Part shown: positions 1,646 to 35,313 of the stretch, piece by piece
How the letters are laid out: each line of letters starts with the position of its first letter
How positions within the stretch are numbered: the stretch's first letter is position 1
Source of the DNA: Macrostomum lignano
Taxonomy: Eukaryota
Reading direction: 5' to 3'
Length of the DNA stretch: 64,000 nucleotides
Assembly: GCA_002269645.1 (NCBI GenBank)
Contig: NIVC01000376.1
Location: 124,001 to 188,000 of the forward strand
The notes under the pieces: model-generated
What the model was told of the DNA's origin: nothing
The model's input: only the letters and a program-made list of their open reading frames with translations
The model's database searches: none
Program-made: the position numbers and the translations under genes

Positions 1646-3107
1646 AGCATTATACAAAAAATTACAAGTGTGTAGGCCCCTTTCACAAAGGTATTAGACC
1701 CTCTTTCATGTATATTTATTTGCTAGAGCAGCAACCAGCAGAAATAGACAGCATACTATGCGCTACAAGTGCTGCGCGCCTGTGTGCACACTACACTAGA
1801 AAAATTTCAAAAGTGCATTGGACACCATCCACAGTTTTACAACTTTTTTCCTATAGGGCTCAAAGTCATTATTAGTCCAAATGACCTGACATAAATATAT
1901 AAAATACTGCTGTTTTAACTGTTTTAGTGTTTAGAGTAAAGGTAGATATGAGTGGAGTAGGTTGCAATATAGCTGCTAGTAGCCATCTCAAGCAGTTAGT
2001 CAACTCATGCTTGAAAGTTTTGGTCATTTAAAGTGCTGGTGTCCTTTTGCAGTGCCATGATTTTGTTGTCCCTATTATCTAAGGCTCTTTCCTTAGTGTT
2101 GCATAGAGATGTTCCGAAATTTCGATTTCGATTTTCCGAAATTCAGATTTTTTTAGAGCAAATTTCGATTTCAAAAAAATTTCGGAAGTCAAAATTTCGG
2201 AAGTGCCTACTTCCGAAATTTTTATCTGATTTTAGTTTTTTTAGAACTTCGTTACTGTCTTTTATCAGTGATCTTATACAGTTTTTACATGTAAAACTTT
2301 TTGAATTTGTTAAAACTGTTCCATGCATGTAGGACATGTAACATGGTAGTTTGTACATGTGGAACTATAAATTTTCGTAAATTTTGTTGCACTTTAAAGC
2401 TGCAAAAGCGTCTGCTGATATATTGCATATTTTTGCATTTTACAGTATATATATGTACATTTACCGTACATGTACATGCATTATCGTTTACACGATCTCA
2501 GTTATTGCTAGTCATGCAGTACTGATACATGTACATTTTAACTGTACATTTTATACATGTACAACTCAGTATACACCCTATACCCTACCGCCTAGATGGA
2601 TAAAGGCAGAGAAATTTGTTTTGTCTAGCAGGGAAAAGGCGCGCTTTGCTCCCGTGCTTTAATACCGTCTAGTAATGCAATATATGCGCCTTAGTGTTTC
2701 TTTTAAAGGCACTAGTTCAAATAAATTACTTAACACATTTACAGTATATGTAGTTTTTGCGTCGAAAAAAAATTTTGCATTTAAAAGTGGCAATGAGGGA
2801 TTCTACTTATTTAGTGGCCGAAAATAAACGAACTTCTGCTAAACATACATGTATTTTGTTTTGCATGAGCAGTAAATCGAAAGTAGAAAAGTGAGCATAC
2901 ATGCGCAACAGTCGGCCGAGTCGGCCGATCCGGCCGACCGATTTGGCGGCCAACCAAGTAAGTCGCAAAATTGATTAACCGCCAAAAAAAAACAAAAAAA
3001 CAAAAGACGAAAAAGGGGAAAGGAAAAGGAAAAAATGAGAAAAAGGGAGCAAAGAGAAAGAGAAAAACACAAAAAGAGTTGTAAGTGCTGTAAGTTGCAG
3101 CACTGAA

Positions 3108-4612
3108 GACAAGGTAAGTCGCACTGAGGGCAAGCTAAGTCGCACCGAGGGCAAGCTAAGTCGCAGCAGGACCGAGCTAAGTCGCATCGAGGGCGAACTA
3201 AGTCGCACCGAGCGAGAGCTAAGTCGCACCGAGGGCGAGCTAAGTCGCACCGAGGGCAAAATAAGTCGCACCGAGCGAGAGCTAAGTCGCACTAAGTCGC
3301 AGCAGGACCGAGCTAAGTCGCACCGAGGGCGAGCTAAGTCGCAGCAGGACCGAGCTAAGTCGCACCGAGGGCGAACTAAGTCGCACCGAGCGAGAGCTAA
3401 GTCGCACTAAGTCGCAGCAGGACCAAGCTAAGTCGCACCGAGGGCGAGCTAAGTTGCAGCAGGACCGAGCTAAGTCGCACCGAGGGCGAACTAAGTCGCA
3501 CCGAGCGAGAGCTAAGTCGCACTGAGGGCGAGCTAAGTCGCAGCAGGACCGAGCTAAGTCGCACCGAGGGCGAACTAAGTCGCACCGAGCGAGAGCTAAG
3601 TCGCACTAAGTCGCAGCAGGACCAAGCTAAGTCGCACCGAGGGCGAGCTAAGTTGCAGCAGGACCGAGCTAAGTTGCACCGAGGGCGAACTAAGTCGCAC
3701 CGAGCGAGAGCTAAGTCGCACTGAGGGCGAGCTATGTCGCAGCAGGACCGAGCTAAGTCGCACTAAGGGCGAGCTAAGTCGCACCGAGGGCAAAATAAGT
3801 CGCACCGAGCGAGAGCTAAGTCGCACTAAGTCGCAGCAGGACCGAGCTAAGTCGCACCGAGGGCGAGCTAAGTTGCAGCAGGACCGAGCTAAGTCGCACC
3901 GAGGGCGAACTAAGTCGCACCGAGCGAGAGCTAAGTCGCACTGAGGGCGAGCTAAGTCGCAGCAGGACCGAGCTAAGTCGCACTAAGGGCGAGCTAAGTC
4001 GCACCGAGGGCAAAATAAGTCGCACCGAGCGAGAGCTAAGTCGCACTAAGTCGCAGCAGGACCGAGCTAAGTCGCACCGAGGGCGAGCTAAGTCGCAGCA
4101 GGACCGAGCTAAGTCGCACCGAGGGCGAACTAAGTCGCACCGAGCGAGAGCTAAGTCGCACTAAGTCGCAGCAGGACCGAGCTAAGTCGCACTAAGTCGC
4201 AGCAGGACCGAGCTAAGTCGCACCGAGGGCGAGCTAAGTCGCACCGAGCGAGAGCTAAGTCGCACCGAGGGCGAGCTAAGTCGCAGCAGGACCGAGCTAA
4301 GTCGCATCGAGGGCGAACTAAGTCGCACCGAGCGAGAGCTAAGTCGCACTGAGGGCGAGCTATGTCGCAGCAGGACCGAGCTAAGTCGCACTAAGGGCGA
4401 GCTAAGTCGCACCGAGGGCAAAATAAGTCGCACCGAGCGAGAGCTAAGTCGCACTAAGTCGCAGCAGGACCGAGCTAAGTCGCACCGAGGGCGAGCTAAG
4501 TCGCACCGAGGGCGAGCTAAGTCGCACCGAGCGAGAGCTAAGTCGCACTGAGGGCGAGCTAAGTCGCAGCAGGGCCGAGGTAAGTCGCAGCAGGACTGAG
4601 TTAAGTCGCAGA
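3108..4612. repeat. ~21-bp minisatellite (CTAAGTCGCACCGAGGGCGAG variants) with ~220-bp higher-order unit, inside the inner hAT
   Basis: Tandem copies read directly; near-identical repeat ORFs at 3596-3826 and 3816-4046 are offset by 220 bp. Confidence 0.95.
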
Positions 4613-4814
4613 GCATCTTTAGGATTATTAGGATAGGATTAGTTTAGGATGAATTTAATGTATCACTTACTAGGGTGTAGGCTACGTGTGCATTAACGCA
4701 TCAATTTGAAAAATTAAGAATTACGAAGCCAGAAATGGCTAAGGAATAGAAATAGGGATAGAATAACTTATAAGCAGTAATTTTTCAGCCCTATTACAAT
4801 TGCAAATCATACTT

Positions 4815-7069
4815 TTAATAATATTTAATTAGCAAATTAAAACTGCAAGATTCTAACGGTCTTATATATGAACTTAGAAGAACTGTAGTCTGACCAGAGA
4901 TTGTCCTTTCTGTAGCGCGTTCTGAAGCATCTGCATCTCTAGAGTCTGAATCAGAAAGATGGTCCTCTGTTTCAGATTCAGAGCTGTCATCTTCCATTCC
5001 AAACCGTCTAGCAAGAGGTATGATTCTCGAACTGTATGTAAAGACAGTATGTAATGTTTCAGCATTAGGCAATAACACTGGGTTGAGCACATTAAATATT
5101 GAGTAGTCATCCTCAGGAAAATAATTACGCAGCTGATCAATTATGCTATCAATGATTCGACTGCGAATCTCATCCAGTGCTGGATAAGCTCCCATGTCAA
5201 CAACACTGCCACGTCCACTAGCATCAAATAATCTATTTCTTAGAGATCTGTCTGCAGCAGAACCTGGTTGCTTCAACTCAAACCTCTCTGTTGGATCGCT
5301 GCTTCCAGGGCCGGAAGGACAAGCAAAGTTAGAATAAGATAGGTCTCTTGTGTGACATCCTGAATGGTATTCCAGCTGCGGATATCCATCTGCAGTTCCC
5401 AAAACTCGACGACACTTGCAGGAAGCCAAAAAGTCCACAATGCGAGGACCATTGTTCGTTTTTAAGGTTTCTAGTGAATGGATAAGGTTAGTGTGGCGTT
5501 CTTGCAAGCCAATAAATGTACCCTTGGCTCTTTGAAACTGCAAGGACTCAAATTCCAGTAATTTTAGAATGTCCATGAGAAATAGATGTAATGAATAATA
5601 CCGGACATTTTGCAATGTTTTCAATAATCCAGAGGCAGTTGCTTTACTTTCGTCATCAAAGCCTGAGGAAGGTGATTTGATATTTTCTAAATTTGTCAGA
5701 AGCAAGTAGTACGACTTTCGAATCACATCAAGAGCAGACACTTCCGATGCAACCCACCTGATGCGATATATTCTTTTTAATTCATAGAAAACCAAGTTGA
5801 GTGCTTCCGAAGTTTGTGCCAAAGATGCCTTACGTTTAACAGCGTGGCTCATATAAAATTTGTGTAGAGAATTTATATTCTTATCGAGATGTTGCATAAA
5901 TGGGAAGATTTCAAAGGCATGATAGATTGAAAGTTCTAACTTATGCGCTGCACAATGGTGCTGAAAAAATTGTTTGCTAGCCCAAGGCCTCAGTTGACTT
6001 ATTAATCCCACTCGACTTCCTGTCATTACGGATGCACCATCAGTTGTCACCCCCAATAGCCTTCGTTTGATTTCATCTTCTAGCTTGTCATCCGAAAATA
6101 AACGGATGAGAAGTTCATAAATGCTTCGTCCAGTCTCTACTTCAGTCAGACGTTTAAACCGATAAAAAACATCAAATGTTGGCTGTTTTCAAGAACTCTG
6201 AAGTATATCATGACGTAGCTGTTTGAATGAATATCAGACGTTGTATCTAGTACAATAGAAATCGGAAGATTGTCAGCACTTTTAATGTAATTCACAAATG
6301 TCCGATGCATTGTATTACTGATTGATTCCACCATTGCTGCGGCACTTTTGCGATGCTTATGATGGCTCCCCATATCCAACCCATTTTTTACTTGTAAATC
6401 AATCATATTTGGATGAGCACTGAATGGAATATTAGATTTGACTTCGGCATAAACTGTTGTCAAAACTCGGGCTGTTATTTCATCTCGTTTAGTTTTAGCT
6501 AGTCTAGCGGCCTCATTCATCTGTTTGAGTTGCTTTGCAAGAACTGAAGTATGTTTTTCCTTCATCCACTTTATGGCGTCACTGAAGTGTATTTGATGAA
6601 TGTTCCTGTAGTTTTCTTTGTACGCTATCTTTTGCATGACCTTTGGGAATGTAGCCTTGTTCTGTTGCAAAAGTTAACTTACGTTGGCTCTCTAGATTTG
6701 TCTCCTTTTTCTTATGTGCATTCAAAAATTTTCTGCAGATCCGACATTGTATTCCAGATCTTGATAGATCTTCGGTGTTTTGAACATATTGAAACCATGT
6801 CTTCATTTCTTGTGACACAAATTTTCTTGAAAATGATCTGCAATGGTCAAATTAGAGAATATTTTGGGATTTGGACTATTTGTGAGTATCTAAAAGCAAT
6901 ATGCTAATAAGTGCAATACACAATACACTATACATTAATTTACAGTTCGTCAGTTTCCATTTACTTACTGTGACTGGTGCATCTCCAAAGAATGTAACCA
7001 CTCCTCTCGAAAACCAGATGTATCCTCCCAGTCCTTTTTAGGGAAAACTTCAATATTTTCGCCCATCAT
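4815..7069 (-). pseudogene. ZNF862-like hAT transposase, frameshifted (~6580, ~6185) and apparently lacking the C-terminal dimerisation domain
   Basis: CRIC zinc-finger region (6579-6818); SIVLDTTSD first catalytic Asp region (6146-6670); GVTTDGASVMTG and HCAAHKLEL motifs (4815-6056); putative intron 6838-6968 (GTAAGT...TTGCAG). Confidence 0.85.
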
Positions 7070-7129
7070 AGAGGAAGACGAGGGCTTTGATGCTGAAGTG
7101 GCTAGACATGCGTCTGCAGATGTGCTTAT

Positions 7130-8596
7130 TCATGGTATTTTTTTTTGCGATGGCCCTGCTTCTGCAGTATTTACTTGTACTATTTCAACATCACCTGAAC
7201 CCCTTGAGTTGCTCGAATCTAAATCAACAATAGGACTTTGGCAAAGTGATCGTTTCGTTGATTGTCTTTGAATATTTACTTGCCTAATAATTTCCACTTG
7301 TAGTTTGCTTGTTTGCTGGTCATTCTCCAACAACTCTCTTCTTTCCTGTACATTTGCAGCAGAGCAAAAATTAGAAGTTTCTGCAGCAGCAGTTTGAACA
7401 GCATGATCTCGATTAGCTGCTATTTGCTCTGAAAATTCATAGGACCTGGCCAATTCACTACGGTGTGAGCTTTCAGAACATGGAGCTGGAGCAGGAGCTA
7501 GTCGCATTTCGATTCTTTCTGTTGCTGATGAAGCAGATGCTAATGCTGAGTCTGCCAATGTACCTGCTTCTCTTGAAGGTGTATTTATGATGGCTTCAAT
7601 ATTGTCCTCTAAAATCCAATGAGCACCTGAGCAGTCATTTTCTCTACCTGGAGTCAACTGTCCAAGTTTCCACCTTGTAAAAAGCAAAGGCTTTCGTAAC
7701 TCACTGCTGGATTCAGGGCACCGGTTTATTGAATAGTCCTCATGACCAAGTTCATCCCATTCTCTTGCTGGCTTTAAGATGTAGTTGGGCTTGTCTCTTA
7801 GCCTACGATAAATGGACTAAAAAAATGTGCACCTGTTATTTTGTGTACTTCGTGCATAGATGATCATGTCATGCACATTGTTCCTAATAATTTCAGCTAA
7901 TGAGTTATCAATGATAATTTTATCTTCATAAACAGGTCTTCTTTGTGTTGCATGCATTTTAGCTAGTCGCAGTTTTCCAATGCTACTGGCAGTTGTGGAA
8001 CTTGAACTGTCCGATTCTGATCTAGAAAAGTCTCGTTGATACAAGAGAATAATGGCCATAGCACTTTTACCATTCCCATTCTTTAATGCATTTGGTTCTG
8101 TTAAAATTGTCTTACTAGCAGACTTGAAAAAATCAATGATGGATGACTGCAATGATCCACTAGGAGCGGAACTTGGCAGCCCATGTCTAGTTTTTCCCTG
8201 ATACCCAATAGATGTATCGGTAAAAAACATATCTGCTGCTTCCTGCTTCTCTTTTGATGCAATAACAAAGAAACTGCTGTCCGTTTTGAAGCCCGAGGAC
8301 CGATAGAAGTCAGCAGAAAATGAAACCACAGGTCGTCTAAAATCGCCGCTATATTCTTGAACTCCAATCAGAAGAAAATCACGGAGTCTCACTGGCACTG
8401 ATCCTAATAGCATTGCAGTTGTGGAACAAACTTTCTTCAGCTCAATGAACTCTGAAAATTCTTGAGATCCAATATTAGGCTCATCAGTATTTAACTCATT
8501 TATAACAATTGAGCACTCACTCTCAGCTAGAATACCATTGATAGCTAGGATGCCACTTAGAATCAGTAGGCAAAGACAACTAAGGCTGTACATCAT
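7130..8596 (-). pseudogene. Transposon cargo: signal-peptide protein with lamin-tail-domain-like (INELN...EFIEL...TPG.ENDC) module; one in-frame TAG at 7817-7819
   Basis: ORFs 7817-8677 and 7130-7687 are in the same frame, separated only by one TAG, and the 43 intervening codons are open; hydrophobic N-terminus MMYSLSCLCLLILSGILAINGILA. Confidence 0.6.
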
Positions 8597-9699
8597 TCTG
8601 TGAAAGATTAAGTCGAGTATATGATTTTGGTGATAAAATAAAATTGATTTATGAGTATTACTATATAAATAAAACATTTAAAAGCCCTTACCTTTACCAA
8701 TTCATGTACAGAAAGTAAGTGTAAATACAACCAATTGCCTTGGTAGTTTAGTTATATGCTCGTATCAGATGCAGGCAGACAGCATAGGCTGCCAAGGTGC
8801 TATAAGTTAAGGTTAACTTTCACTATTTGGCTTTACAGACTGCTTTTATCGCTGCATGCATTGACTTAGCCTTAGCTTGTGCCATCATACTCATACAGCT
8901 ATATATACATATGTATCTCTGCCACTCCCCACTTTTGCAACCTTACACTGTACAATCATGCCTAAAACACTCCGTGTCAAGTGTACTGTTCTAGTGCCAC
9001 ATGGGGTACAAATACGATTAGGAATGACAAGAGTCAAAACCATACATTCACAATAGTTGGCCGATATGGACGACTGATTTGGTGGCCAACCAAGGTAAGT
9101 TGCAAAAATGCCCACCCAAATAAATACCAAAGTAGTATTAAGTAGCTGACGAAGCATTTTGCCTTAATAAAGACAGTTATAGTTACTCCTGCCGTTTACC
9201 CAAAGTTGCGTTAATTTTGCTTTTAGGTTTTTTTCATGTAAGTCGCATTTTTGGCCAAAAACTACGTCGCATTTTTGTTAAAACTAAGTCGCACGGCCGA
9301 CCAAATTTTGGAGGTTGCGCATGTATGAAAGTGAGTGTCGGTTGTACTAAACTTTGTTTTTCTGAATTATGATTTCGGAAAATTTCGATTTCGATTTCGA
9401 TTTCGATTTTGGAAAGTAGCGAATTTCGATTTCGATTTCAATTTCGACAGAAAATTCACTTTTGGAACATCTCTAGTGTTGCAGCCAAGCATTTCTACAT
9501 GTTTTGATAGTTGGCACTTGAAAGTTATTGATACTAGCTGGTCTATTATGGGCATGCAAAATTGCTAGAACAATTTTGCTCTACTAAATTTTTTTAAGTG
9601 GCAGTGGTATCCTCTTTCACTGAGTTGAGCAACATGCATAAAAAACATCGCAGTGTATATGTATCCTAGGTATTACAGATAGTGAGTCAGTCAGAGACA

Positions 9700-24806: not shown

Positions 24807-25625
24807 TTAGCGGCCGCCGCACACACAGACCTCGCTGACCACGCTGATCTCGTGCGGCGCCCAGCGGCACTCGAACTCGCCAGCCACCACGGACAGCCGC
24901 TCGGCGATGCTGCGCATTCGCTTGTTCCACCGCCTGCTCTTCTTCTTCTTCCTTTGCTCTGCCGAATTCCTCCGCTTCTGCTGCGCCTTCTTGTCCCGTC
25001 GTTGGCGTCGTCGCCTACGCAGTCGACGCAGTCGGCGCCGTAGCTGGCGCTTGAAGCTGTTCGAGCAGCGCCAGCGCAGCAGCTGCAGCCGGCGCGGCCG
25101 CCGTCGACGCTGGGCGCCGCAGCGCAGCAGGCCGGGCGGCCAACCGCAGGAGGCACCGCCGCCGCATTCGACGCTGCGAGCCCAGCGCGGCCAGACAGCG
25201 TCGCCCAGATCCGTCCAATTAGCCCGGCCCGGACAGGCGGCCAGGCGCGTCAGCCAGCCGCGGACGGACTGCGGCGAGGCGTTGACGGCGGCCAGCTGCC
25301 TGTTTAGCAGAGTCTGCTGCTCCGGCTGAAGCTCGACGAACTCGCCGCCAGGGTTTGCAACTCGCGGCCGGACGGACAGCCAGCCGAGCCGGAGGTCCTC
25401 TTGGCCGCCGCTGCCCAGCAGCTTGGTCAGCTTGCCGCGGCGCAGCTCTTTTTGACTCGGCTTCGGTGGCTGCGGCTTCGGCAGCTGCCGCTCCGGTGGC
25501 TGCTGCAGAGTCAGCCGGACCGACACCCCGCCTGTGCGGTCCGCATTTTGCAGCTGGGCGTTGGCGACGCGTGCAATTTGAGGCTGGCACAGCAGCAGGT
25601 GAACCAGAAGCAGCAGTAGATTCAT
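24807..25625 (-). CDS. nlg: Noggin-like protein (single exon, 272 aa) with a basic insertion in the cystine-knot domain
   Basis: Signal peptide; WLTRLAACPGRANWTDLGDAVWPRW...C...SCGWPPGL.C...LLRWRC...ECRW...VVSEVCVC aligns by eye with the noggin motif [25 protein letters not shown]...SCSVPEGM.C...VLRWRC...CGW...IISECKC. Confidence 0.9.
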   Translation of the reverse strand: MNLLLLLVHLLLCQPQIARVANAQLQNADRTGGVSVRLTLQQPPERQLPKPQPPKPSQKELRRGKLTKLLGSGGQEDLRLGWLSVRPRVANPGGEFVELQPEQQTLLNRQLAAVNASPQSVRGWLTRLAACPGRANWTDLGDAVWPRWARSVECGGGASCGWPPGLLRCGAQRRRRPRRLQLLRWRCSNSFKRQLRRRLRRLRRRRRQRRDKKAQQKRRNSAEQRKKKKSRRWNKRMRSIAERLSVVAGEFECRWAPHEISVVSEVCVCGGR

Positions 25626-26728: not shown

Positions 26729-29670
26729 ATGAAGATACACGCTGCGTCCCTGACTGTCGTCATTGCTGTCGTCTGCTTGTGGCAGCCTGTGTCTGCCACC
26801 ACCAGCTTCTGGAACAGCCAGTACTCAACTGCCGAGTTTGCTCAGTTCCGCTACAAGAACCAGTTTATGTTGTCGATCTTCCAGCATCTGACTAAGAACA
26901 ACACGTTTTACATCACGCCTCTGGTGCTGCTCGACCACCGGTCTGGCAGTCTGATGCACAATCCGTTTACCGAGTACTGGGAGCTTCGTTTCAGCGTCAT
27001 CATGTGGGACATGGAGTTGCAAGGTGAGTTTGAGCGGCTTTGTCGTTGTTTGACTTTCAGTTATCAGTAACAAGGACGCCAGCATCAAAGGCAAGAATGA
27101 AAGGCAAGAACTAATGACTCTGAATTAGTCGAATTTTCAGGTATCAGCTCATGCCTACAAACCAGGAGTACAAACGTTACTCTTCCATTTTTCAGCCAGT
27201 GTCTACAACTTCCTGACCACCGTCAAAGGCGTTCGCAACCCGGACGTGAAGCTGCTCCCGATGGAACGCGTCCGCTTCCAGTGGCAGTCGCGCAGCCGGC
27301 CCATCGTGAAAAAGCTCGTGATGGAAACCGAGTTCATCGCCACGCACCATCTGCCTCGGCTTCTCACTCTGACGTTCGCCTGCAAGAACCAGTCGCAGTG
27401 CGCCATGCTCAAAGACAAGGTCAGAGAGGATCCGGAGTCGCTCGACAGTTTAAAGCTGGACTGCTTCCTGACTGCGCAGAAGACGGCTAGTAAGACTGTG
27501 CGAGTCACCACTGACAACCTGATGCAGTCTACAACGTTCTCGAAGCTGCTAATGCTGCCTAAGGATGGAAATTACAGGTGAGGATAGCGCTTGATTTACA
27601 TCTCAAAAAGGGGCTCTCTGCTAGCAAATGAGTCGCCGATCGCATAAGGTCCAAAAGACTCTTGTAGCGCGACTTGTGTCCTATTCGAGGTGTGACCAAA
27701 TTAGTTAGGGATGATTTATTAGAACATTATAACATATACCATACTATGTAAATGTAAGTGCCTCACTATTAGAAAATTAAAGTGCAGAAGTGGAATGTCA
27801 GCACTGTATCTTTGTCAGTTCCTTGTCTTTGGTCCTGCAAGGTACATGCGAGCCGACGACTTCAACAACCTGGTTCAAGAGACCTACTCGTCGGTTCGGG
27901 CCACAACTATTCGATCCACCGAATACGTTGAAAAGTACGATGAGCTAAACATAGTACGCTTGATCGAGAGCGCGCTGAAGCAGGACGAGGTCATCACCAG
28001 CACTCTCAGCCAAACGCAGTGGCAGAGCGTCTTCTGGGATCCGACATTCGCTCGACCAGACAAAGTCGTAAGAGAGGCAGCCAAAACGTTCAAAAAAGAG
28101 GACTCTACAGGACAACTTCGGGTCGATAGGGCGTACCTGAGAAGCAACGAGGAGGCCAGGAAACTGTTTGGCTCAAGCAGGTCCCTCAGTGGCTCGGTTG
28201 GGGGCTCCTGGAGAGGTTTGAGTAGCGGTTCAATCAGCGGAGAGAGCTCCCGTAGGGCTGGTGACTCTATCAGCGGCAGCCTGTCGCACTTGAACGACCG
28301 CTACACAATGGACGAGCTCAACCGGAAGCTGTCTGACGCTAATCTGAACGTCGAATGGAACGGTGAACGGTTTATTGTGAGCCCGATGCGTCTGGTTCGA
28401 ATCAACGAGCAGGCCTACCGGTCCCGAAGGGAGCTGATCAGCAACAACATGCAGCTGACCATCTACCAGCAGAGCGCTTCGTTGAGCGTAATTGTTAGGC
28501 AGGAGCACAACGAGACCGCCATGATGAGGGAGACCGCCGCGACAGTGGGTGAGTTGGACGATGGGTTGGATATTTAACTACAATTTTAATAGCTATAATT
28601 AGGAAGTACCTGTAGCTACCTGTATAAATGAACATCATATCAACATTAAGCATTGTTGACCCGAAGTTTCAATTGAAGCTTGAATTTCCTGACCTTTACA
28701 TAGAATTGCTAGGCTCAGTTTCAAACCAATTAATTAATACTGCCATAATCCAATTAGTCAGCACTAATTTTCAACCTGTTTTAGAACCCGTTACTGCGGT
28801 ACATCATATGTACCTTTAAAATTCGAATATTAGACTTTGTCATAAACCCTAAATTGCTCCTGATGTCGCAGCTGTTATAAAATTTCTGTGGCAATCAAGC
28901 TGGTGTGGTTATAAACTTCCACAAACGATACCAGCTCATTAGGCACCAGAATGGAGCTTAAATCAAGGAGCACAGTAATGTTTTATAGACACTCATAAAA
29001 CGCAAGGCTTATGATTTCACGGTTCGGGGAAAAAGTAACGATTGGCTACCGAGATATAGGAAATTTTTTAAAATATTTATTGCTAAGCTGTCATCGGGGA
29101 ATCGCTGAAATGATGTGGCTCATCGGGGGGGGGGGGTTGTTTGCTGAGATACCAAAGGGCAATTTGGATTTGTTGATAGGCCTAACGTCAAAAGGAGAGT
29201 CAGGGTTCAGCCACGTCTTAAAGGAGGAGATGGCTTTTACTGGTCGGACAAATTATTTATTTCAATCGTTTAAGTAAGCATTAGATTTATTTGATATCCT
29301 ATGAGTACTTAGCTGTTCTCGTTAATCTTGTTAAACAATAAAGTTGGACTCTGAGCTTAGTTAATTATCATGAATCATCATAATTGCATAAAACATGCAC
29401 TAAACACATTCCCTCCACGCAGGCGCTTTCCCCACCGAGTACAGCTACTGCCTGCTGTCGAACGGCGGCAGCTGTCCTCCGGGATTCACCCGCAGCTCCG
29501 GCTTCATGAAGTCCATCAGGCTGGACACCAGCAGCAGCGGCATGATCAGCAAGGCCAAGCTGGGCGACTCGGCCATCAAGTGCCACAGTCCCGGAGACTC
29601 GGACGACTGCTCGTTCAGAGGCTGGGAGCCGTTCAAGGGCGAGCTGCATCTGCACGTTTGCTGCCGTTGA
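26729..29670 (+). CDS. Secreted 543-aa protein, paralog 1 (exons 26729-27023, 27196-27577, 27842-28548, 29423-29670); unknown N-terminal domain with Ser/Gly hairpin plus ApeC-like C-terminus
   Basis: All four exons join in frame (phases 1,2,1; total 1632 nt); signal peptide; same exon structure as paralog 2. The functional call is inference. Confidence 0.85.
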
Positions 29671-30225
29671 ATGTCGAGGAAGTCATTGCTAACCTTACTG
29701 CCGATTGTGACCATTTCAAAACTGGTCGCGGAAAGTTTTTCAATAATATTCAGTAGTAGAATATAAACAATGTGCCTGATTTGAATTTTATTCTGGCTCT
29801 GTCAAACAATTCTGTTTGTTACTCGTAATTGGTAGCTATGCGATTAATTTGTAATTTATTGTCAAATAAGTCTCATTGCATCCAACACATTTATTTGGCT
29901 GTAAATGGCAATAAATTAATTTAATTTAAAAAAAAACTCAGACAAGCACACCATCGTCTGAACTTGGCGAGCAATTCCGGCTATTGAAAATGTAAATCTT
30001 CGAATAGCGAATTATTTACCTAACGTTTCGCGCATTTTTTTTACTTTTCGGTACATCACGTGTGCTAGTTGTGCACACTGCTAAACCGCTGGTATTCAGA
30101 TAAATGTTCTGAAAATGCACCCAGGATTTTATGGATTTTATGGTGGGGGGACAATGCCAAGAATTCTACGAGCCGTACAGAGTCGATTCCTACATTTTTT
30201 AAAATCTGTGTTGTTAGCGCTCATT

Positions 30226-30830
30226 TTGGCACCGCAGGCACTCATTTTAGCGCCGCAGGCACTCATTTTGGCACCGCAGACACTCATTTTAGCGCCACAG
30301 GCACTCATTTTGGCACCGCAGACACTCATTTTAGCGCCACAGGCACTCATATCGGCGCCGCAGGCACTCATTTTGGCACCGCAGGCACTCATATCGGCGC
30401 CGCAGGGCACCGCAGGCACTCATATCGGCGCCGCAGGCACTCATATCGGCGCCGCAGGCACTCATTTTGGCACCGCAGACACTCATTTTAGCGCCGCAGG
30501 CACTCATTTTGGCACCGCAGGCACTCATTTTGGCACCGCAGGCACTCATTTTGGCACCGCAGACACTCATTTTGGCACCGCAGACACTCATTTTAGCGCC
30601 GCAGGCACTCATTTTAGCGCCGCAGGCACTCATTTTGGCACCGCAGGCACTCATTTTGGCACCGCAGGCACTCATTTTGGCACCGCAGGCACTCATTTTG
30701 GCACCGCAGGCACTCATATCGGCGCCGCAGGCACTCATTTTGGCACCGCAGGCACTCATTTTGGCACCGCAGGCACTCATATCGGCGCCGCAGGCACTCA
30801 TTTTGGCACCGCAGACACTCATTTTAGCGT
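30226..30830. repeat. 21-bp minisatellite (GGCACCGCAGGCACTCATTTT)
   Basis: Direct. Confidence 0.95.
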
Positions 30831-31250
30831 TGGCCTTAGTGGAAGTCTTTTGCCACTAATGACACCATTTATAAAATATGCAGGATTTGCAAAATAGTTA
30901 GTTTTTTACAAAAAAACTCCAATCGCACTACTGCTGTTAGCGAACGCGGCAGAGCATGTGATTCGCGATCTTATCAGTCTGCCCAAATCATTTGATCACC
31001 TGCGCCTCTCCGCTCGTGCGGCCTGGCCTTATCAGTTGTTTTTGTGAAATTTTCAGTGCACGCCAGGCTTCCAGATCCAAGTGCTTTGTCTAAACAGAAA
31101 CTGAATTTCGACTGTGTGCGCACCCAAATACAGTGCAAGTCAAGCAAGCAAACTTCTAAATTGGCAGGTATTTCCGTTTCACCTTGATAACCGTCTTGGT
31201 TAAGCAGCTCTGCAGCCAAGTTGGGCCAAAATTACACGGATACGAAAATC

Positions 31251-34200
31251 ATGGCAAAGCACTTGGCAAGTTCAGTCGCTTTGATTTTGTCAGCTGCCAT
31301 CTGCCTGTGGCAGCCGGCGAACTGCGTCAGCTTCTGGGACAGTCAGTACTCGACTAGTGAGTTCGCTCAGTTCCGCTACAAGAACCAGTTTACCGTGTCC
31401 ATCTTCCAGCACCTTACCAAGAACAGGACATTCTATATCACGCCTCTGGTGCTGCTGGATCACACATCCGGCTCGCTGACTTACAATGACTTCACAGAGT
31501 TCTGGGAACTCCGCTTCGACGTCATCATGTGGGATAGCGAGATGCAGAGTAAGAAAAATGCTTTCCATAATATAAAATAAGACCCTTTTAAATATTTTAA
31601 AGGTTTAAAGGGATTTTTGGACACCTTTGCAGCAAAATAGTACACGTATGTGAATGGTGTATAAGTAGCTGTGTGATTGAGTCTGCCGGGATCCTGCAAA
31701 CTGCACTGACTGAGGGCTTAAAAAACCAAGAACTAACCTCATCGAACATCCTGTACCAATTGCCAACCCTCGCGAACATTGCAGCCAGCGTCGTCGACTT
31801 TCTAACCCGGGTGAAAAAGGTCGCCAGACCGGATGTGCGGCTGCTGCCTCTGGAGAAGGTCCGCTTTCAATGGCAATCTCGCAACCGACCCTTGAAGAAG
31901 AACATCATCTTGGAGAACGAGTTCTTGGCCACCAATCACCTATGGGATCCGTTGAAACTAATTTTTGCTTGCAAAAACGAGACTTACTGCGCCAGACTGC
32001 TGACGAAAGTCAGAAACAACCCGAGGTCTCTCGACAGCCTCGTTCTGGACTGCTTCTTGACCGCACAGAAATCTGTTAGCAAAACTGTGACAGTCACTAC
32101 TGACAATCTCATGGAGACAACTGCCTTTTCGAAGCTGATGCTGCTGCCTCCTGATGGAAATTACAGGTTATTATGTCACGTGTAGTCATATTGTATGTAA
32201 TTAAAGATGCCAGGTCCTGAATTAACAATGACTGTTATTTCTCATTGATCAAAAAGTGGCACTCAAAACTGGAGTCGTGTAGGCCTCTACTGATTAGTAG
32301 AACTACTCTCGTAAATGTATCAACGCCATCGAAGCTAATTGAGTACAATACTTCCTAACGCAGGTATATGCGAGCCGACGACTTCAACAACCTGGTGCAA
32401 GAGACCTACTCGTCGGTTCGGGCCACCACAATCCGGTCGACTGAATACGTTGAAAAGAAAGACGAATTCGACATCATGCGTCTCATCGAGGGCGCTTTGA
32501 AGCAAGACGAAATCTACGCCAACAGACTAAGCGAGACCAAGTGGCGCAGCGTCTTCTGGGACCCGGTGTACGCACGTCCGGATCGCGTTGTGCACGAAGC
32601 CTCAAGAACCTTTAAAAAGGACGAGTCCACGGGTTTAATGAAGATCGACAGGGATTACCTGAGAAGCAGCGACGAGGCTAAGAAACTATTCGGCAGCACA
32701 TCGAGCACCAGCTGGTCAGCTGGCGGTTCGGCTTTCCTTTTCTCTGCCAAAGTTGGCTCGAGCAGGACAGTGACGGATAGGGGCTCGGAGAGCTCCAGAC
32801 GGTCTTATCAGCGAGACTCTTTCACAGGCGAGGAGCTCAACAATAAGCTATCCGAACGCAACCTGAATGTCCAGTGGAATGGCGAGCGATTCGAAGTGCG
32901 CCCACTGCGGCTGGTTCGAATCAACGAGCAGTCGTTCCGCTCCCGTCGAGAGCTGGTCAGCAACAACATGCAGCTTACAATCTACCAGCAGACTACCACG
33001 TTCAAAGTGATCACTGTACCGGAGCGAAACAGCAGCTTGTTGCTTAGGGATCTCGCCAGTGCTGGTAAGCAATTAGTACTCCTCGATTGCTACACGTCAG
33101 TATCTTATTTAGTTGAACTAGAACACGATGAAAATAATTGATTTACATTCGATGGTTTTTCTCAAGGTTTACCTAGTTTACCATATGAAAACATGCACTT
33201 ATAACAAATTATTTCTAGTCAAGCAGCAGCATCACGAGACATGGCATCGGAGAACTTAAATCCCATTTAGCCTTAGTACAGCTCAGTACTCCCATTGAGA
33301 CATAGCACCTCAGTAAATGTAATTACGCTTTTTAAAGTTATAAATGTCAACGAGCCTTTAGTAGTCAGAATCCATCTCAGCTAGCAAACGCAGCCCACTA
33401 CAACAGCTCCAAGGTTTTAAATGTCATGGGAAAAGGCAAACAAAGAACTAAAACGATAAAGTTTGCTTTCAGCCCCAAAAGTGCTTCGATTAGGTTCCCT
33501 GATCGTAACCAAATACTATTGAAGACGAAGCCCTTGACTTACTTGACTTAGCTGCAGGGCTGTCCCGGAGGGGACACAGCGGGAAGGCGCGGGCGCCCAT
33601 TCCGCTAGTCCCTGAACGGCCGACGCGTCGCTATGGACGGAGGGTTGGCGCCGCCCAGGGAGGTCCCCCAGTGTCGCCAGCAGCTATAGTGCTCTCTGGA
33701 AAGGAGAGTTCAGCCCTGCGGGTGGCCCGAAGGTAGCGCATGAGCTGATTAAAGTTTTCGGGTTTGCACGCTTCAGTAATAGATGTGTGTGGCCCGAGGT
33801 AAGTGAGTCTGGCCCGCGTGAAGGCGGGACAGATGCTGACGAAATGCTCAGCGGTTTCGTCACCTGAGTTGCAGAAACTACAGGTGGCGTTGGTGGCGTT
33901 GCCCTGCAGGTACTGGTGCCTGGAGAAGCAGCCGTGACCAGAGAGGGTCATGGTGGCAGCCCGGATGTCTCTGCGCGAGAGGCGCAAGAGGAGCTTCCGG
34001 AGCTGGTGAGAGGGCTGAGGGACAGCGCCTCTGGATTGCCTGCAGTTCGTGCGGTTCGCCCAAGTCGAGCGGTGCTGAGTCCTGATCCACGCTTTGATGC
34101 GCGAGTCGATGACACAGCCAGGAACCGGGACAAGAGGTTCGGGGCCGAGAGAGGAGCCGGAGGCACCAACTTTTGCAAGGGTGTCAGCCAACTCATTTCC

Positions 34201-35313
34201 TCGGATCCCCACATGCCCCGGAACCCACTTAAGGGTAATTTTGTTGGCGGAACCCAACACGTTGAGGAGTTTGATACAGTCGAGGACTGTAGCAGAGTTG
34301 GTGCTGCAGCCACTGATGGCGTGCAAGGCAGCTTGGCTGTCCGAATGGAAAATGATGTTCTTACCAGTAACGCCAGTGGCGAGAAGCTCTGCAGTGCAGG
34401 AGCTGATGGCCAGAACTTCATTTTGGAAAACACTGGAATTGACCCCAGTGTATTGAGCGTGGGTAGCGATGACCCTCCCGTTCAGAAAGATTCCAACACC
34501 AAAGCCGGTGTTGGCTGACTGCTTAGAACCGTCGGTGTAGCAATGAAGCTCACCAGGGTTCCATTGGTCATTGATGTTATCGCGCGAGTCGATAGCTACG
34601 GAGTAGCGCTGTCTCAGGTTGAGCGTTGAGGCAATGCCATCGGTGAAGACGCGATTGGCCTGACACTCGTTGAGAAAGTTGAGGCACAGATCGCTATGCG
34701 GGACAAGGTTCCGCTTAGCAGGTGCTCTCATGTAAATGAATTTGACGCCGGCATCAATTAGACGCCGCGTCGTTCTAGCCGCCTCACCCCTGATGAAGAG
34801 GTCAAGAGGCGGAAGATTAAGGAAGGCCCCATGCCAGCAAAGGGCGTGGACCTGGTGGCAAGACGAAGCCCAATTGATTGTTAATCTACAGCTGCCCCCG
34901 AAGTAAGTTCTTCCAGGCGGTCCTTGAACGCAAAATTGTAAGATGGAATGTATGCAGGTACTAAATTCTATCTCAAGCCATTCCTTTCATAAAACTATTC
35001 TATCTGAATCTGCGAAATAAATACAACAATGTTCCACCATAACAAATCTCTTGCATACGCTTCAGGAGAATTCCCCAGCAAGTACAGCTACTGCCTGCTG
35101 TCGAACGGCGGCAGCTGTCCTCCGGGCTTCACCCGCAGCTCCGGCTTCATGAAGTCCATCAGGCTGGACACCAGCAGCAGCGGCATGATCAGCAAGGCCA
35201 AGCTGGGCGACTCGGCCATCAAGTGCCACAGTCCCGGAGACTCGGACGACTGCTCGTTCAGAGGCTGGGAGCCGTTCAAGGGCGAGCTGCATCTGCACGT
35301 TTGCTGCCGTTGA
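31251..35313 (+). CDS. Secreted 542-aa protein, paralog 2 (exons 31251-31548, 31785-32166, 32364-33064, 35066-35313)
   Basis: In-frame GT-AG splicing with the same phases as paralog 1 (total 1629 nt); clear protein similarity throughout. Confidence 0.85.
33534..34859 (-). mobile_element. 5'-truncated non-LTR retrotransposon with RNase H and C-terminal zinc-knuckle-like region (I/R1/Loa-type), in intron 3 of paralog 2
   Basis: ORF 33631-34731 with YTDGS, AI...HSDSQAAL and WVPGH.GI.GNELAD; 12-bp TSD AAGACGAAGCCC at 33522-33533 and 34860-34871; short AAGTC-type tandem 3' tail. Confidence 0.9.

What the first reader, a model, noticed from the sequence alone, without database searches (positions are those of the whole stretch)
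4815..8596. hAT transposon carrying a signal-peptide/lamin-tail-like ORF that is in frame with, and spliceable to, its transposase
Seen: inside the TIR/TSD-defined element one reading frame runs from 8596 (signal peptide, INELN..EFIEL..TPG.ENDC) through a TAG at 7817 and a TGA at 7130, and stays open for 53 more codons to a GTAAGT donor (6968). The phase-2 donor joins the TTGCAG acceptor (6838) exactly in frame with the transposase zinc-finger exon. Either the ancestral element encoded a paradoxical secreted-domain-transposase fusion, or it is a two-gene element with the transposase starting at ATG 7069, just 60 nt after the cargo stop. A secreted cargo travelling in a hAT would be a little-described arrangement.
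Basis: partly seen in the sequence, partly recalled or inferred. Interest (0 to 1): 0.8.

Follow-up and report, generated by a model that had tools for sequence, protein, structure and literature searches.

The report
Dead hAT transposon, unusual transposase N-terminus
The "cargo" gene is really the first exon of the transposase gene of a decayed flatworm hAT transposon, and it belongs to a large, undescribed group of hAT transposases that start with a signal-peptide-like leader and a cysteine-containing beta-rich domain, which is odd for a protein that must act in the nucleus.

Summary
The element is a 6,432-bp hAT transposon (window 2896..9327, 14-bp TIRs, 8-bp TSD AAAGTGAG) from Macrostomum lignano or a close relative.

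The "cargo" is not cargo. It is exon 1 of the transposase gene, joined to the zinc-finger/transposase exon by removal of a 131-nt phase-2 intron.
- A sister element in M. lignano (L009) is intact. Its GenBank model PAA51197.1 (1,313 aa, from an RNA-seq-guided annotation) uses exactly this junction.
- 38 related proteins carry the same N-terminal module and the hAT core in one uninterrupted ORF.

The two-gene alternative is refuted. The TGA at 7130 is private to this copy, the TAG at 7817 is shared with only one other copy, and neither candidate start Met is conserved.

The window copy is dead: two stops, two frameshifts, a ~505-bp deletion of the hAT dimerisation domain and an expanded 1.5-kb minisatellite.

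The N-terminal module has no significant Pfam, PDB or Foldseek match. Its lamin-tail resemblance is sub-threshold. The hydrophobic leader and a covarying cysteine pair look secretory, while a conserved basic cluster looks nuclear. That paradox is real, family-wide and unexplained.

The parts
2888..2895 (.). Target-site duplication AAAGTGAG (3' side of the gene)
   Evidence: Identical 8 bp at 9328..9335.
2896..2909 (+). Terminal inverted repeat CATACATGCGCAAC (3' end of the element in gene orientation)
   Evidence: Exact match, one of only two in the window. The same TIR bounds the elements in L005, L006, L009, L010 and L012.
2910..3099 (-). 3' subterminal region with a purine-rich tract (about 2985..3060) and an AAGTCGCA motif
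   Evidence: Homologous to L005 12304..13013.
3100..4620 (.). Expanded minisatellite built from the subterminal motif CTAAGTCGCA (21/42-bp units; higher-order periods of about 200-220 bp)
   Evidence: TRF rows 3115..4610. The window element has 73 AAGTCGCA copies against 28 in L005. The extra ~470 bp is absent from four sister copies.
4621..4890 (-). Remnant of the 3' untranslated region, downstream of the internal deletion. The apparent ORF tail (...TTVLLSSYIRPLES...*) and the stop at 4815 are read-through into this region.
   Evidence: The window reads ...TCTGGTCAG|ACTACAGTTC. L005 has about 505 bp between those two points.
4890..4891 (-). Junction of a ~505-bp internal deletion. It removes the last ~135 codons (hAT C-terminal dimerisation domain with the catalytic Glu), the stop codon and the start of the 3' UTR.
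   Evidence: tblastn of P0003 residues 516..650 finds nothing in the window. Breakpoint read.
4891..6837 (-). Exon 2: BED-like zinc finger (CxxC at 6746..6735; His pair near 6600..6580) and the hAT RNase-H-like core (LDTTSD Asp about 6247..6245, TTDGAS Asp about 6041..6039, HCAAHKLEL). It is broken by a 2-nt deletion at about 6585 and a 1-nt deletion in a T-run at about 6170.
   Evidence: 98.6% identical to the M. lignano protein P0003 in two frames. Indels against L005/L010. Frames.
6838..6968 (-). 131-nt phase-2 GT-AG intron (GTAAGT...TTGCAG). The in-frame TAA created by the donor ends the unspliced ORF.
   Evidence: Same position and phase in L001, L004, L006 and L009. Identity to the L009 intron is 53.8%, which is the shuffled level, against 65% and 78% for the flanking exons.
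6969..7594 (-). Exon 1, linker. It is predicted to be partly helical and partly disordered. It carries two family-conserved Cys, a decayed basic cluster (SQKKIP* at about 7150..7130; SQRKRPC in L001) and the conserved KDWEDTSGFREEWLHSLEMHQ motif (7039..6969). It contains the private TGA at 7132..7130.
7595..8518 (-). Exon 1, N-terminal module: a beta-rich domain of about 308 aa (C-x-VINELN, EFIEL, NGNGKSAMAIILLY, DMIIY, NRC, INRC, TPGxENDC). It contains TAG at 7819..7817 (Glu in all outgroups; TAG also in L010).
   Evidence: Profile search gave 184 relatives. AlphaFold2 domain model: pLDDT 82.5, pTM 0.85. dN/dS 0.13. Codon states.
8519..8596 (-). Exon 1, start codon and hydrophobic signal-peptide-like leader (MMYSLSCLCLLILSGILAINGILAES)
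   Evidence: Leaders of this kind occur in 39 of 57 Met-started family members, against 2.8% of internal 25-aa windows.
8597..9313 (-). 5' non-coding region (presumed promoter and 5' UTR) with two subterminal AAGTCGCA motifs near the end (9240, 9286). An acceptor-like TTTCACAG lies just upstream of the ATG.
   Evidence: 98% identical to L005 7131..7848.
9314..9327 (-). Terminal inverted repeat (5' end in gene orientation)
9328..9335 (.). Target-site duplication AAAGTGAG

Best explanation
Window 2896..9327 is one decayed, non-autonomous copy of a hAT DNA transposon of Macrostomum lignano or a very close relative.

The family has a single gene on the minus strand. Exon 1 (8596..6969) encodes four things in order:
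- a hydrophobic leader;
- a ~300-aa beta-rich domain with conserved cysteines;
- a ~200-aa linker carrying a basic NLS-like cluster;
- a WEDTSxF...W...HQ motif.

A 131-nt phase-2 intron is removed. Exon 2 continues in frame with a BED-like zinc finger, the RNase-H-like DDE core and, in intact copies, the hAT C-terminal dimerisation domain. The full protein is about 1,300 aa. The so-called cargo is therefore the N-terminal third of the transposase itself, and this holds across a whole clade of hAT elements.

This copy cannot make the protein. It has two nonsense codons, two frameshifts and no dimerisation domain. It keeps both TIRs and the subterminal AAGTCGCA repeats, so it could at most be moved in trans by an intact relative such as the L009 element.

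Shown here: element boundaries, splice geometry, homology, fusion in relatives, lesions, and purifying selection on exon 1.

Inferred: the module is needed for the element's life cycle. My preferred reading, held at about even odds, has two parts. The leader is a genuine ER signal peptide and the first Cys pair a disulfide, so at least part of the protein pool enters the ER/nuclear-envelope lumen. The basic cluster and zinc finger serve the nuclear, DNA-cutting role of whatever fraction reaches the nucleus. How the two are reconciled is not known.

The confidence given (0.9) applies to the gene structure and the identity of the element, not to the function of the module.
For: Element:
- Exact 14-bp TIRs and an 8-bp TSD.
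- The same TIRs with different 8-bp TSDs bound five further full-size copies, and a 297-bp MITE carries them too.
- The transposase is 98% identical to M. lignano P0003.
- Intact relatives pass Pfam's threshold for Dimer_Tnp_hAT. The only solved relative is Hermes.

Single gene:
- In L009 the CDS 4001..8046 minus one 104-nt GTAAGA..TTTTAG intron translates exactly to PAA51197.1/P0185, 1,313 aa, with the junction ...HQSA|YFSRKFVTNEMKTWFQY.
- That annotation was built from RNA-seq-guided transcript assembly (PMC5730564).
- The equivalent join in the window, L005 and L006 is in frame.
- L007 has no intron there and reads through in one ORF.
- 38 proteins have the N-module and the transposase in one ORF; 21 of them are at least 1,000 aa.
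- The intron is unconstrained while the flanking exons are conserved.
- The residues between the acceptor and the Met (FSRKFV) are conserved, whereas the Met is K or R in relatives.

Selection: dN/dS is 0.13 in the module, 0.5 in the linker, and 0.23 for window versus L001.

Lesions.

Leader and cysteines:
- 39 of 57 leaders pass the hydrophobicity test against 2.8% of internal windows.
- The leader is present in the same ORF as the transposase in at least 7 full-length members.
- The first two Cys are both present in 63 members, both absent in 12 and discordant in 2.
- A basic cluster upstream of the WE.T motif is conserved.
Against: - I saw no RNA-seq reads directly. The spliced junction rests on one automated, transcript-based GenBank model in a sister subfamily about 70% identical at the DNA level.
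- GenBank models of the window's own subfamily (P0179, P0172) start at the exon-2 Met. None of the five genomic copies of that subfamily has an intact exon 1. In this subfamily the N-module may therefore already have been dispensable, or supplied in trans.
- A cleavable signal peptide on a nuclear enzyme has no known mechanism here. There is no stop-transfer segment in the linker.
- SignalP was not available and my leader test is a crude hydrophobicity rule.
- The Cys co-occurrence is not corrected for phylogeny, and conserved Cys could bind zinc instead.
Confidence: 0.9

Rival explanations
1. Two products rather than one. Exon 1 is translated alone from unspliced or separately processed RNA, because the donor itself creates a TAA stop. 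This would give a ~560-aa secreted or regulatory protein. The transposase would be made separately from the exon-2 Met (MKTWFQY), for example after SL trans-splicing onto the 6838 acceptor. The fusion would be a minor isoform or none at all.
For: - Contigs L001-L004 carry the intron, and their ORFs end at the TAA inside GTAAGT.
- GenBank models P0004, P0172 and P0179 start at MKTWFQY.
- M. lignano trans-splices tens of thousands of transcripts and has polycistronic precursors (PMC5730564).
- Many ~370-aa family hits end at ...WETT.xF[QE]*, which is the same kind of donor-stop.
Against: - In-frame TAA is an automatic consequence of a phase-2 GTAA donor.
- The Met is not conserved (K or R in relatives), and conserved residues precede it.
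- Intronless relatives have only the fused ORF.
- P0185 is a transcript-based fused model.
- The exon-2-only models come from copies whose exon 1 is broken.
Confidence: 0.1
2. The leader is not a working signal peptide, and the N-module is a nuclear, lamin-tail-like DNA- or chromatin-binding accessory domain of the transposase. LTDs accompany nucleases in bacteria. The conserved cysteines would bind zinc or be structural. This is a rival for the function of the module, not for the gene structure.
For: - LTD (PF00932) is the only Pfam family hit by more than one member: 3 of 25, best E 0.007, covering the VINE-N...EFIEL strands.
- The model is beta-rich, and the weak Foldseek hits are Ig-like sandwiches.
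- A conserved NLS-like cluster, a zinc finger and the DDE core require nuclear action.
- Several full-length members lack a hydrophobic leader (P0087, P0148, P0117).
Against: - All LTD tests are sub-threshold: 15-17 bits against a cutoff of 34.3, no LTD structure among the top Foldseek hits, hhalign probability 0.14%.
- The leaders look like textbook n/h/c signal peptides that end just before a conserved Cys.
- The paired gain and loss of the first two Cys is the pattern of a disulfide, not a zinc site.
Confidence: 0.4
3. One-off capture: a host gene fragment for a secreted protein was picked up by this particular element (transduplicated cargo).
For: None beyond the first impression of a secreted-type ORF inside a transposon.
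Against: - The module is present in every subfamily examined in Macrostomum (L001, L004, L005, L009, L010, L012), truncated in L006.
- It is also present in 150+ distant clusters, 38 of them fused to the transposase.
- No stand-alone host homologue was found. The short hits are exon-1 fragments ending at a donor.
Confidence: 0.01

Closest known systems
hAT superfamily DNA transposons (Ac, hobo, Hermes, Tol2, Buster)
   Same: Short TIRs, 8-bp TSD, subterminal short repeats, an N-terminal BED-like CxxC...HxxxxH finger, an RNase-H-like DDE core with the C/DxxH motif, and a C-terminal hAT dimerisation domain (PF05699). Hermes is the only solved relative.
   Different: A ~550-aa extension upstream of the zinc finger: hydrophobic leader, ~300-aa Cys-containing beta domain and linker. 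It is not recorded for any hAT transposase I could find. The 14-bp TIR starts CATAC rather than the usual YARNG-type end (from my own knowledge, not tested).
ZNF862 / KIAA1586 / C17orf113 / FAM200-ZBED5 type hAT-derived proteins (PF27073, DUF4371)
   Same: These are the nearest named relatives of the catalytic part, at 24-30% identity, and they share the precomputed PF27073 hit.
   Different: They are host or 'like' genes. None of the listed ones matched the N-module profile, and the element here has TIRs, TSDs and multiple near-identical copies, so it is a transposon.
Lamin tail domain (LTD, PF00932), including the LTDs of bacterial secreted nucleases
   Same: The opening strands [VIL][VIL]INE[IL]N ... 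EFIEL ... L.GY.L align to LTD profile positions 4-48. Later motifs (NGN..A..LL, D.V.Y, S.NRC, TPG..N) resemble the bacterial LTD signature as I recall it. That recollection is a lead, not a test. LTDs often carry signal peptides and sit next to nucleases.
   Different: Scores of 15-17 bits against a gathering score of 34.3. The match covers only the first 45 residues. The domain is about three times LTD length with helical insertions. No LTD structure was retrieved by Foldseek, and hhalign to the lamin A tail was not significant.
Transposons regulated by intron retention or alternative splicing (P element third intron; En/Spm TnpA/TnpD)
   Same: An unspliced transcript would end at a stop created by the donor and give a truncated N-terminal protein.
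   Different: There is no evidence here that the truncated product exists or regulates anything. Intronless relatives lack the option altogether.
Cargo-carrying eukaryotic transposons (Pack-MULEs, Helitron captures, Mavericks with fusogens)
   Different: Not applicable. The ORF is part of the transposase polypeptide and is as old as the clade.

Membership tests
hAT superfamily transposon | Terminal inverted repeats at both ends | tested here: met
   14/14 exact at 2896..2909 and 9314..9327. The same TIR occurs in six other elements.
hAT superfamily transposon | 8-bp target-site duplication | tested here: met
   AAAGTGAG (window), CTTGGGTT, AATTTAAA, TAACATCC, TCCAGAAA, GCAACTAG, TGTATAAT at seven insertions.
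hAT superfamily transposon | hAT C-terminal dimerisation domain (PF05699) carrying the catalytic Glu | tested here: not met
   It is deleted from the window copy. It is present above Pfam's threshold in the intact relatives P0185 (32.4 bits) and P0179 (30.2 bits) against a cutoff of 21.4. The family is therefore hAT, and this copy is a defective member.
hAT superfamily transposon | RNase-H-like core with two Asp and the C/DxxH motif | tested here: met
   LDTTSD, TTDGAS and HCAAHKLEL can be read in the window frames. There is a precomputed PF27073 hit on 98%-identical P0003. The local Pfam copy gave no hit on the broken window ORFs.
hAT superfamily transposon | N-terminal BED-type zinc finger | tested here: inconclusive
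   zf-BED E=0.065, 13.7 bits against a cutoff of 20.6. The CxxC...HxxxxH pattern is visible once the 2-nt deletion is allowed for.
Lamin tail domain (PF00932) | Match to the Pfam LTD profile at or above the gathering score | tested here: not met
   No hit for the window or P0001. 3 of 25 members hit, with best E 0.007 and 15-17 bits against 34.3, covering profile positions 4-48 only.
Lamin tail domain (PF00932) | Ig-like LTD fold superposable on solved lamin tails or LTDs | tested here: inconclusive
   The domain model is confident (pLDDT 82.5, pTM 0.85) and beta-rich. Foldseek's best PDB hits are antibody V domains at E 0.02 and TM 0.2-0.4, with no LTD entry in the top 50. hhalign against the lamin A tail gives probability 0.14%.
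Secretory protein with cleavable signal peptide | N-terminal n/h/c-region leader of about 16-30 aa | tested here: met
   Tested with a heuristic only. 39 of 57 Met-started members pass a hydrophobicity/uncharged-run test against 2.8% of internal windows. Leaders typically end 1-4 residues before a conserved Cys.
Secretory protein with cleavable signal peptide | Prediction by a trained tool (SignalP/DeepTMHMM) and experimental ER targeting or cleavage | not testable with these tools
Secretory protein with cleavable signal peptide | Disulfide-bonded cysteines | tested here: inconclusive
   The Cys before VINE and the Cys after EFIEL co-occur in 63 members, are jointly absent in 12 and are discordant in 2 (Fisher p 4.5e-12, not corrected for phylogeny).

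The most novel reading that the evidence does not exclude
A widespread clade of hAT transposases is built as a secretory-pathway protein: a cleavable ER signal peptide, a disulfide-bonded LTD-like beta-sandwich, then a basic cluster (NLS or convertase site) and a complete DNA transposase. The enzyme would be co-translationally routed into the ER/nuclear-envelope lumen, or dual-targeted. That implies an unknown step in transposon biology, such as regulated release to the nucleus, self-limitation by mis-sorting, or cell-to-cell (soma-to-germline) delivery.
Probability: 0.25. Interest if true: 0.85.

Novelty: new variant of a known kind. Interest (0 to 1): 0.6.

Why it matters
Transposases act on nuclear DNA. 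A conserved signal-peptide-like leader and an apparently disulfide-bonded domain at the front of an otherwise ordinary hAT transposase is hard to reconcile with that. It recurs in more than 150 sequence clusters, so it is not an accident of one copy.

It defines an uncharacterised protein domain: no significant Pfam hit, no solved relative, and no paper found describing it. It also poses a concrete, testable question about how this transposase is localised or regulated.

There is a practical side. M. lignano is a transgenesis model for which transposon tools are being sought (PMC5730564, PMC8717057). The sister element in NIVC01003487.1 has intact TIRs, a TSD, a full 1,313-aa ORF and a nearby MITE, so it is a candidate active endogenous hAT.

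For genome annotation, the result shows that ~370-580-aa 'secreted orphan' ORFs next to hAT transposases in invertebrate and metagenomic assemblies are usually exon 1 of the transposase.

Tried and rejected
- Pfam on the window ORFs: nothing significant for the cargo or the broken transposase pieces.
- Profile search of the family against PDB sequences: only low-complexity noise.
- Foldseek of the full-length and domain-only models against PDB and BFVD: no match at E <= 0.001.
- hhalign of the domain profile against the lamin A tail: not significant.
- Third word-indexed protein search with the domain alignment: only 7 hits and no organism names.
- Literature: no paper combining hAT or transposase with lamin tail or LTD. 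The 'hAT superfamily' plus 'signal peptide' hits are unrelated. The SRA/ENA accessions of the relatives do not appear in the searched text, so apart from Macrostomum the host organisms are unknown.
- TIR search around the full-length relative in L008: inconclusive.
- My earlier working claim that both window stops are private was rejected. TAG 7817 is shared with L010.
- An intron after 'TISGQ' leading to a downstream hATC exon was rejected. L005 is colinear there and the window simply has a deletion.
- A type I or type III membrane topology that would leave the transposase nucleoplasmic was rejected. The linker has no hydrophobic segment, and the charge distribution of the leaders is N-in.


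Full report
**1. What is in the window**

On the minus strand an ATG at 8596 opens a frame that begins with a hydrophobic leader. The frame continues through IVINELN...EFIEL...TPGRENDC. It is interrupted by TAG (7819..7817) and TGA (7132..7130). It then stays open for 53 codons plus 2 nt up to CA|GTAAGT, with the G of the donor at 6968.

The acceptor TTGCAG ends at 6838. Joining 6969 to 6837 gives ...WLHSLEMHQSQ-SFSRKFVSQEMKTWFQYVQNTEDLSRSGIQCRICRKF..., in frame with the zinc-finger ORF.

The element they assumed is real.
- CATACATGCGCAAC occurs exactly only at 2896..2909 (+) and 9314..9327 (-).
- Both ends are flanked by AAAGTGAG.
- The element is therefore 2896..9327, 6,432 bp. That is wider than the 4815..8596 of the finding.
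- It includes a 1.5-kb minisatellite (3100..4620) made of the subterminal motif CTAAGTCGCA.

**2. Organism and copies**

The stitched transposase is 98% identical to 'hypothetical protein BOX15_Mlig001790g1' of Macrostomum lignano and 69% identical to a second M. lignano protein.

I fetched five further full-size elements with the same 14-bp TIR and different 8-bp TSDs from the M. lignano assembly GCA_002269645.1. These are L005, L006, L009, L010 and L012. A sixth locus, L011, shows only one recognisable TIR. A 297-bp MITE also carries the same TIRs.

The window, L005, L010, L011 and L012 are 99.3-99.9% identical, so this is a young subfamily. L006 and L009 belong to a sister subfamily about 70% identical at the DNA level.

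**3. The 'cargo' is exon 1 of the transposase gene**

Four independent lines support this.

(a) L009 holds an intact element (2539..8902, TSD TAACATCC). Its annotated CDS 4001..8046, minus one 104-nt GTAAGA...TTTTAG intron at the homologous position, translates exactly to GenBank PAA51197.1 (P0185, 1,313 aa). That protein runs leader, INELN/EFIEL domain, linker...KDWEDTSSFQEQWLDSLETHQSA|YFSRKFVTNEMKTWFQY..., zinc finger, hAT core, hATC. The M. lignano annotation was derived from genome-guided transcript assembly of RNA-seq (PMC5730564), so this junction has transcript support.

(b) In L007, a Logan contig whose transposase is only 34% identical, the same architecture is one uninterrupted ORF with no intron at that point.

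(c) A profile of the two closest exon-1 proteins was searched against 1.84 billion representatives. It found 184 relatives.
- 21 of those are at least 1,000 aa and cover nearly the whole transposase.
- Five of eight tested hit PF05699.

(d) The donor position and phase are conserved in L001 (CA|GTAAGT), L004 (GT|GTAAGT) and L006/L009 (GC|GTAAGA).
- The intron sequence itself is at shuffled-level identity (53.8%) between subfamilies, while the flanking exons are 65% and 78% identical.
- The residues between the acceptor and the exon-2 Met (FSRKFV) are conserved, and that Met is K or R in relatives.

Many ~350-400-aa hits end at '...EWETT.xF[QE]*'. These are exon-1 fragments ending at a phase-2 GTAA donor, which automatically creates an in-frame TAA.

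**4. The two-gene alternative fails**

- TGA 7130 is TGC in L010, L005 and L001.
- The Met at 7069 is Ile/Met in P0001 and absent in P0002.
- TAG 7817 is Glu (GAG or GAA) in L001, L005/L012, L009, L004 and L007. It is, however, shared with L010, so it arose before those two copies separated and is not private.

**5. State of this copy**

Relative to its sisters the window copy has the following lesions:
- TAG at codon 260;
- a private TGA at codon 489;
- a private 2-nt deletion at about 6585 that breaks the His half of the zinc finger;
- a private 1-nt deletion in a T-run at about 6170;
- a private ~505-bp deletion at 4890/4891 that removes the dimerisation domain, the stop codon and the start of the 3' UTR;
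- about 470 bp of extra minisatellite (73 AAGTCGCA motifs against 28 in L005).

The apparent end of the transposase ORF at 4815 is read-through into 3' UTR. The copy is dead but retains both ends.

L005, L011 and L012 share a different set of lesions (39-nt and 1-nt deletions, and a 2-nt insertion). L005 and L012 have different TSDs, so a defective copy has been moved in trans. None of the five copies of this subfamily has an intact exon 1. The only intact full-length gene I saw is in the sister subfamily (L009).

**6. Selection**

Exon 1 evolved under purifying selection.
- L001 versus L004: dN/dS 0.13 in the domain and 0.5 in the linker.
- Window versus L001: dN/dS 0.23.

**7. What the N-terminal module is**

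There is no Pfam hit for the window protein or P0001 and no sequence relative in the PDB.

AlphaFold2 with a 58-sequence alignment gives pLDDT 77 for the whole exon-1 protein. It predicts a long N-terminal helix, a confident beta-rich domain and a partly helical, partly disordered linker. The domain alone gives pLDDT 82.5 and pTM 0.85.

Foldseek finds nothing at E <= 0.001 in PDB or BFVD. The best hits are antibody V domains (E 0.02, TM 0.2-0.4), and no lamin-tail entry appears.

LTD (PF00932) is the only Pfam family hit by more than one member. It is hit by 3 of 25 members at 15-17 bits against a threshold of 34.3, and only over the first two strands. hhalign to the lamin A tail gives 0.14% probability.

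I therefore treat 'lamin-tail-like' as an unproven lead. The later motifs (NGN..A..LL, D.V.Y, S.NRC, TPG..N) do resemble the bacterial LTD signature as I remember it, but that is memory and not a test.

**8. The paradox**

Secretory-looking features:
- The leader is a family trait. 39 of 57 Met-started members pass a hydrophobicity/uncharged-run test, against 2.8% of internal windows.
- Basic residues tend to sit at the N-side, and the leaders end just before a conserved Cys.
- At least seven full-length single-ORF members carry the leader on the same polypeptide as the transposase.
- The Cys before the VINE strand and the Cys after EFIEL are both present in 63 members, both absent in 12 and discordant in 2. 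This is the pattern expected of a disulfide, although the count is not corrected for shared ancestry.

Nuclear-looking features:
- A basic cluster (RRKRKLS, KKKRV, QRKRP) is conserved just upstream of the WE.T..F motif.
- A zinc finger and the DDE core follow it.

There is no hydrophobic stop-transfer segment in the linker. A functional signal peptide would therefore take the whole protein into the ER lumen. I cannot resolve this with sequence tools.

I give roughly even odds to a genuine secretory or dual-targeted N-terminus against a nuclear LTD-like accessory domain whose leader is not used as a signal peptide.

**9. Comparison with known systems and novelty**

The element meets the hAT criteria: TIRs, 8-bp TSD, DDE core, and hATC in intact relatives. 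Hermes is the only solved relative.

The catalytic part is nearest to ZNF862/KIAA1586/C17orf113/FAM200-ZBED5-type proteins.

The 550-aa N-terminal extension is not described in any paper I could find. The fused protein exists in GenBank only as 'hypothetical protein'.

I rate this a new variant of a known kind. The finding as a locus is an ordinary dead transposon copy. The interest lies in the family-wide architecture it exposes.

Noticed in passing
L009 9122..9418 (NIVC01003487.1): A 297-bp MITE with the same 14-bp TIRs and its own TSD (TCCAGAAA) lies 220 bp downstream of the intact 6.4-kb element. This is evidence that the family has spawned short non-autonomous derivatives.
   Followed up: partly
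L005 7117..13011, L012 2117..8011, L011 from 2115: Three copies share identical disabling lesions: 39-nt and 1-nt deletions in exon 1, and a 2-nt insertion in exon 2. L005 and L012 sit at different sites with different TSDs (L011's TSD was not determined, because its second TIR was not found), so a defective copy has been mobilised in trans.
   Followed up: partly
L007 about 2026..3147: The distant relative's transposase ORF is interrupted by about 1.1 kb. Removing it at AG|GC...CAG|G restores the frame exactly (…VTSR|MIRTVYTEVK). It is either a GC-AG intron or a nested insertion. Not resolved.
   Followed up: no
C-termini of P0185, P0003, P0005, P0028, P0032, P0099, P0117, P0134, P0142: Full-length family members end in a conserved tail of the form S-x-[LIM]-F (…SGLF, …SRLF, …SNLF). 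I know of no assigned function for this C-terminal motif.
   Followed up: no
Linker of family members (e.g. P0043, P0057, P0063); window 7150..7130: The conserved basic cluster upstream of the WE.T motif (NRRKRRLS, ERKRKLS) fits a nuclear localisation signal. It also fits an R-x-K/R-R proprotein-convertase site, which would matter if the protein really enters the secretory pathway.
   Followed up: no
window 24807..25625 (-): A 272-aa ORF with a Noggin domain (PF05806, E 1.7e-7).
   Followed up: no
window 27795..28577, 30115..30897, 32368..33141 (+): Three ~260-aa ORFs of similar length on the same strand at about 2.3-kb spacing, with no Pfam hit. They look like a tandem gene array.
   Followed up: no
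window 42190..43689 (+): An uninterrupted 499-aa cytochrome P450 ORF (PF00067, E 1e-101).
   Followed up: no
window 33631..34731 (-) and 52229..53191 (+): An RNase H ORF and a retrotransposon gag/PNMA-like ORF, which are remnants of retroelements elsewhere in the window.
   Followed up: no
L008 14750..16345: Downstream of another full-length family member (P0087) there is a tandem array with a period of about 210 bp. It echoes the 3' subterminal minisatellite of the Macrostomum elements. No TIRs were found for that element.
   Followed up: no
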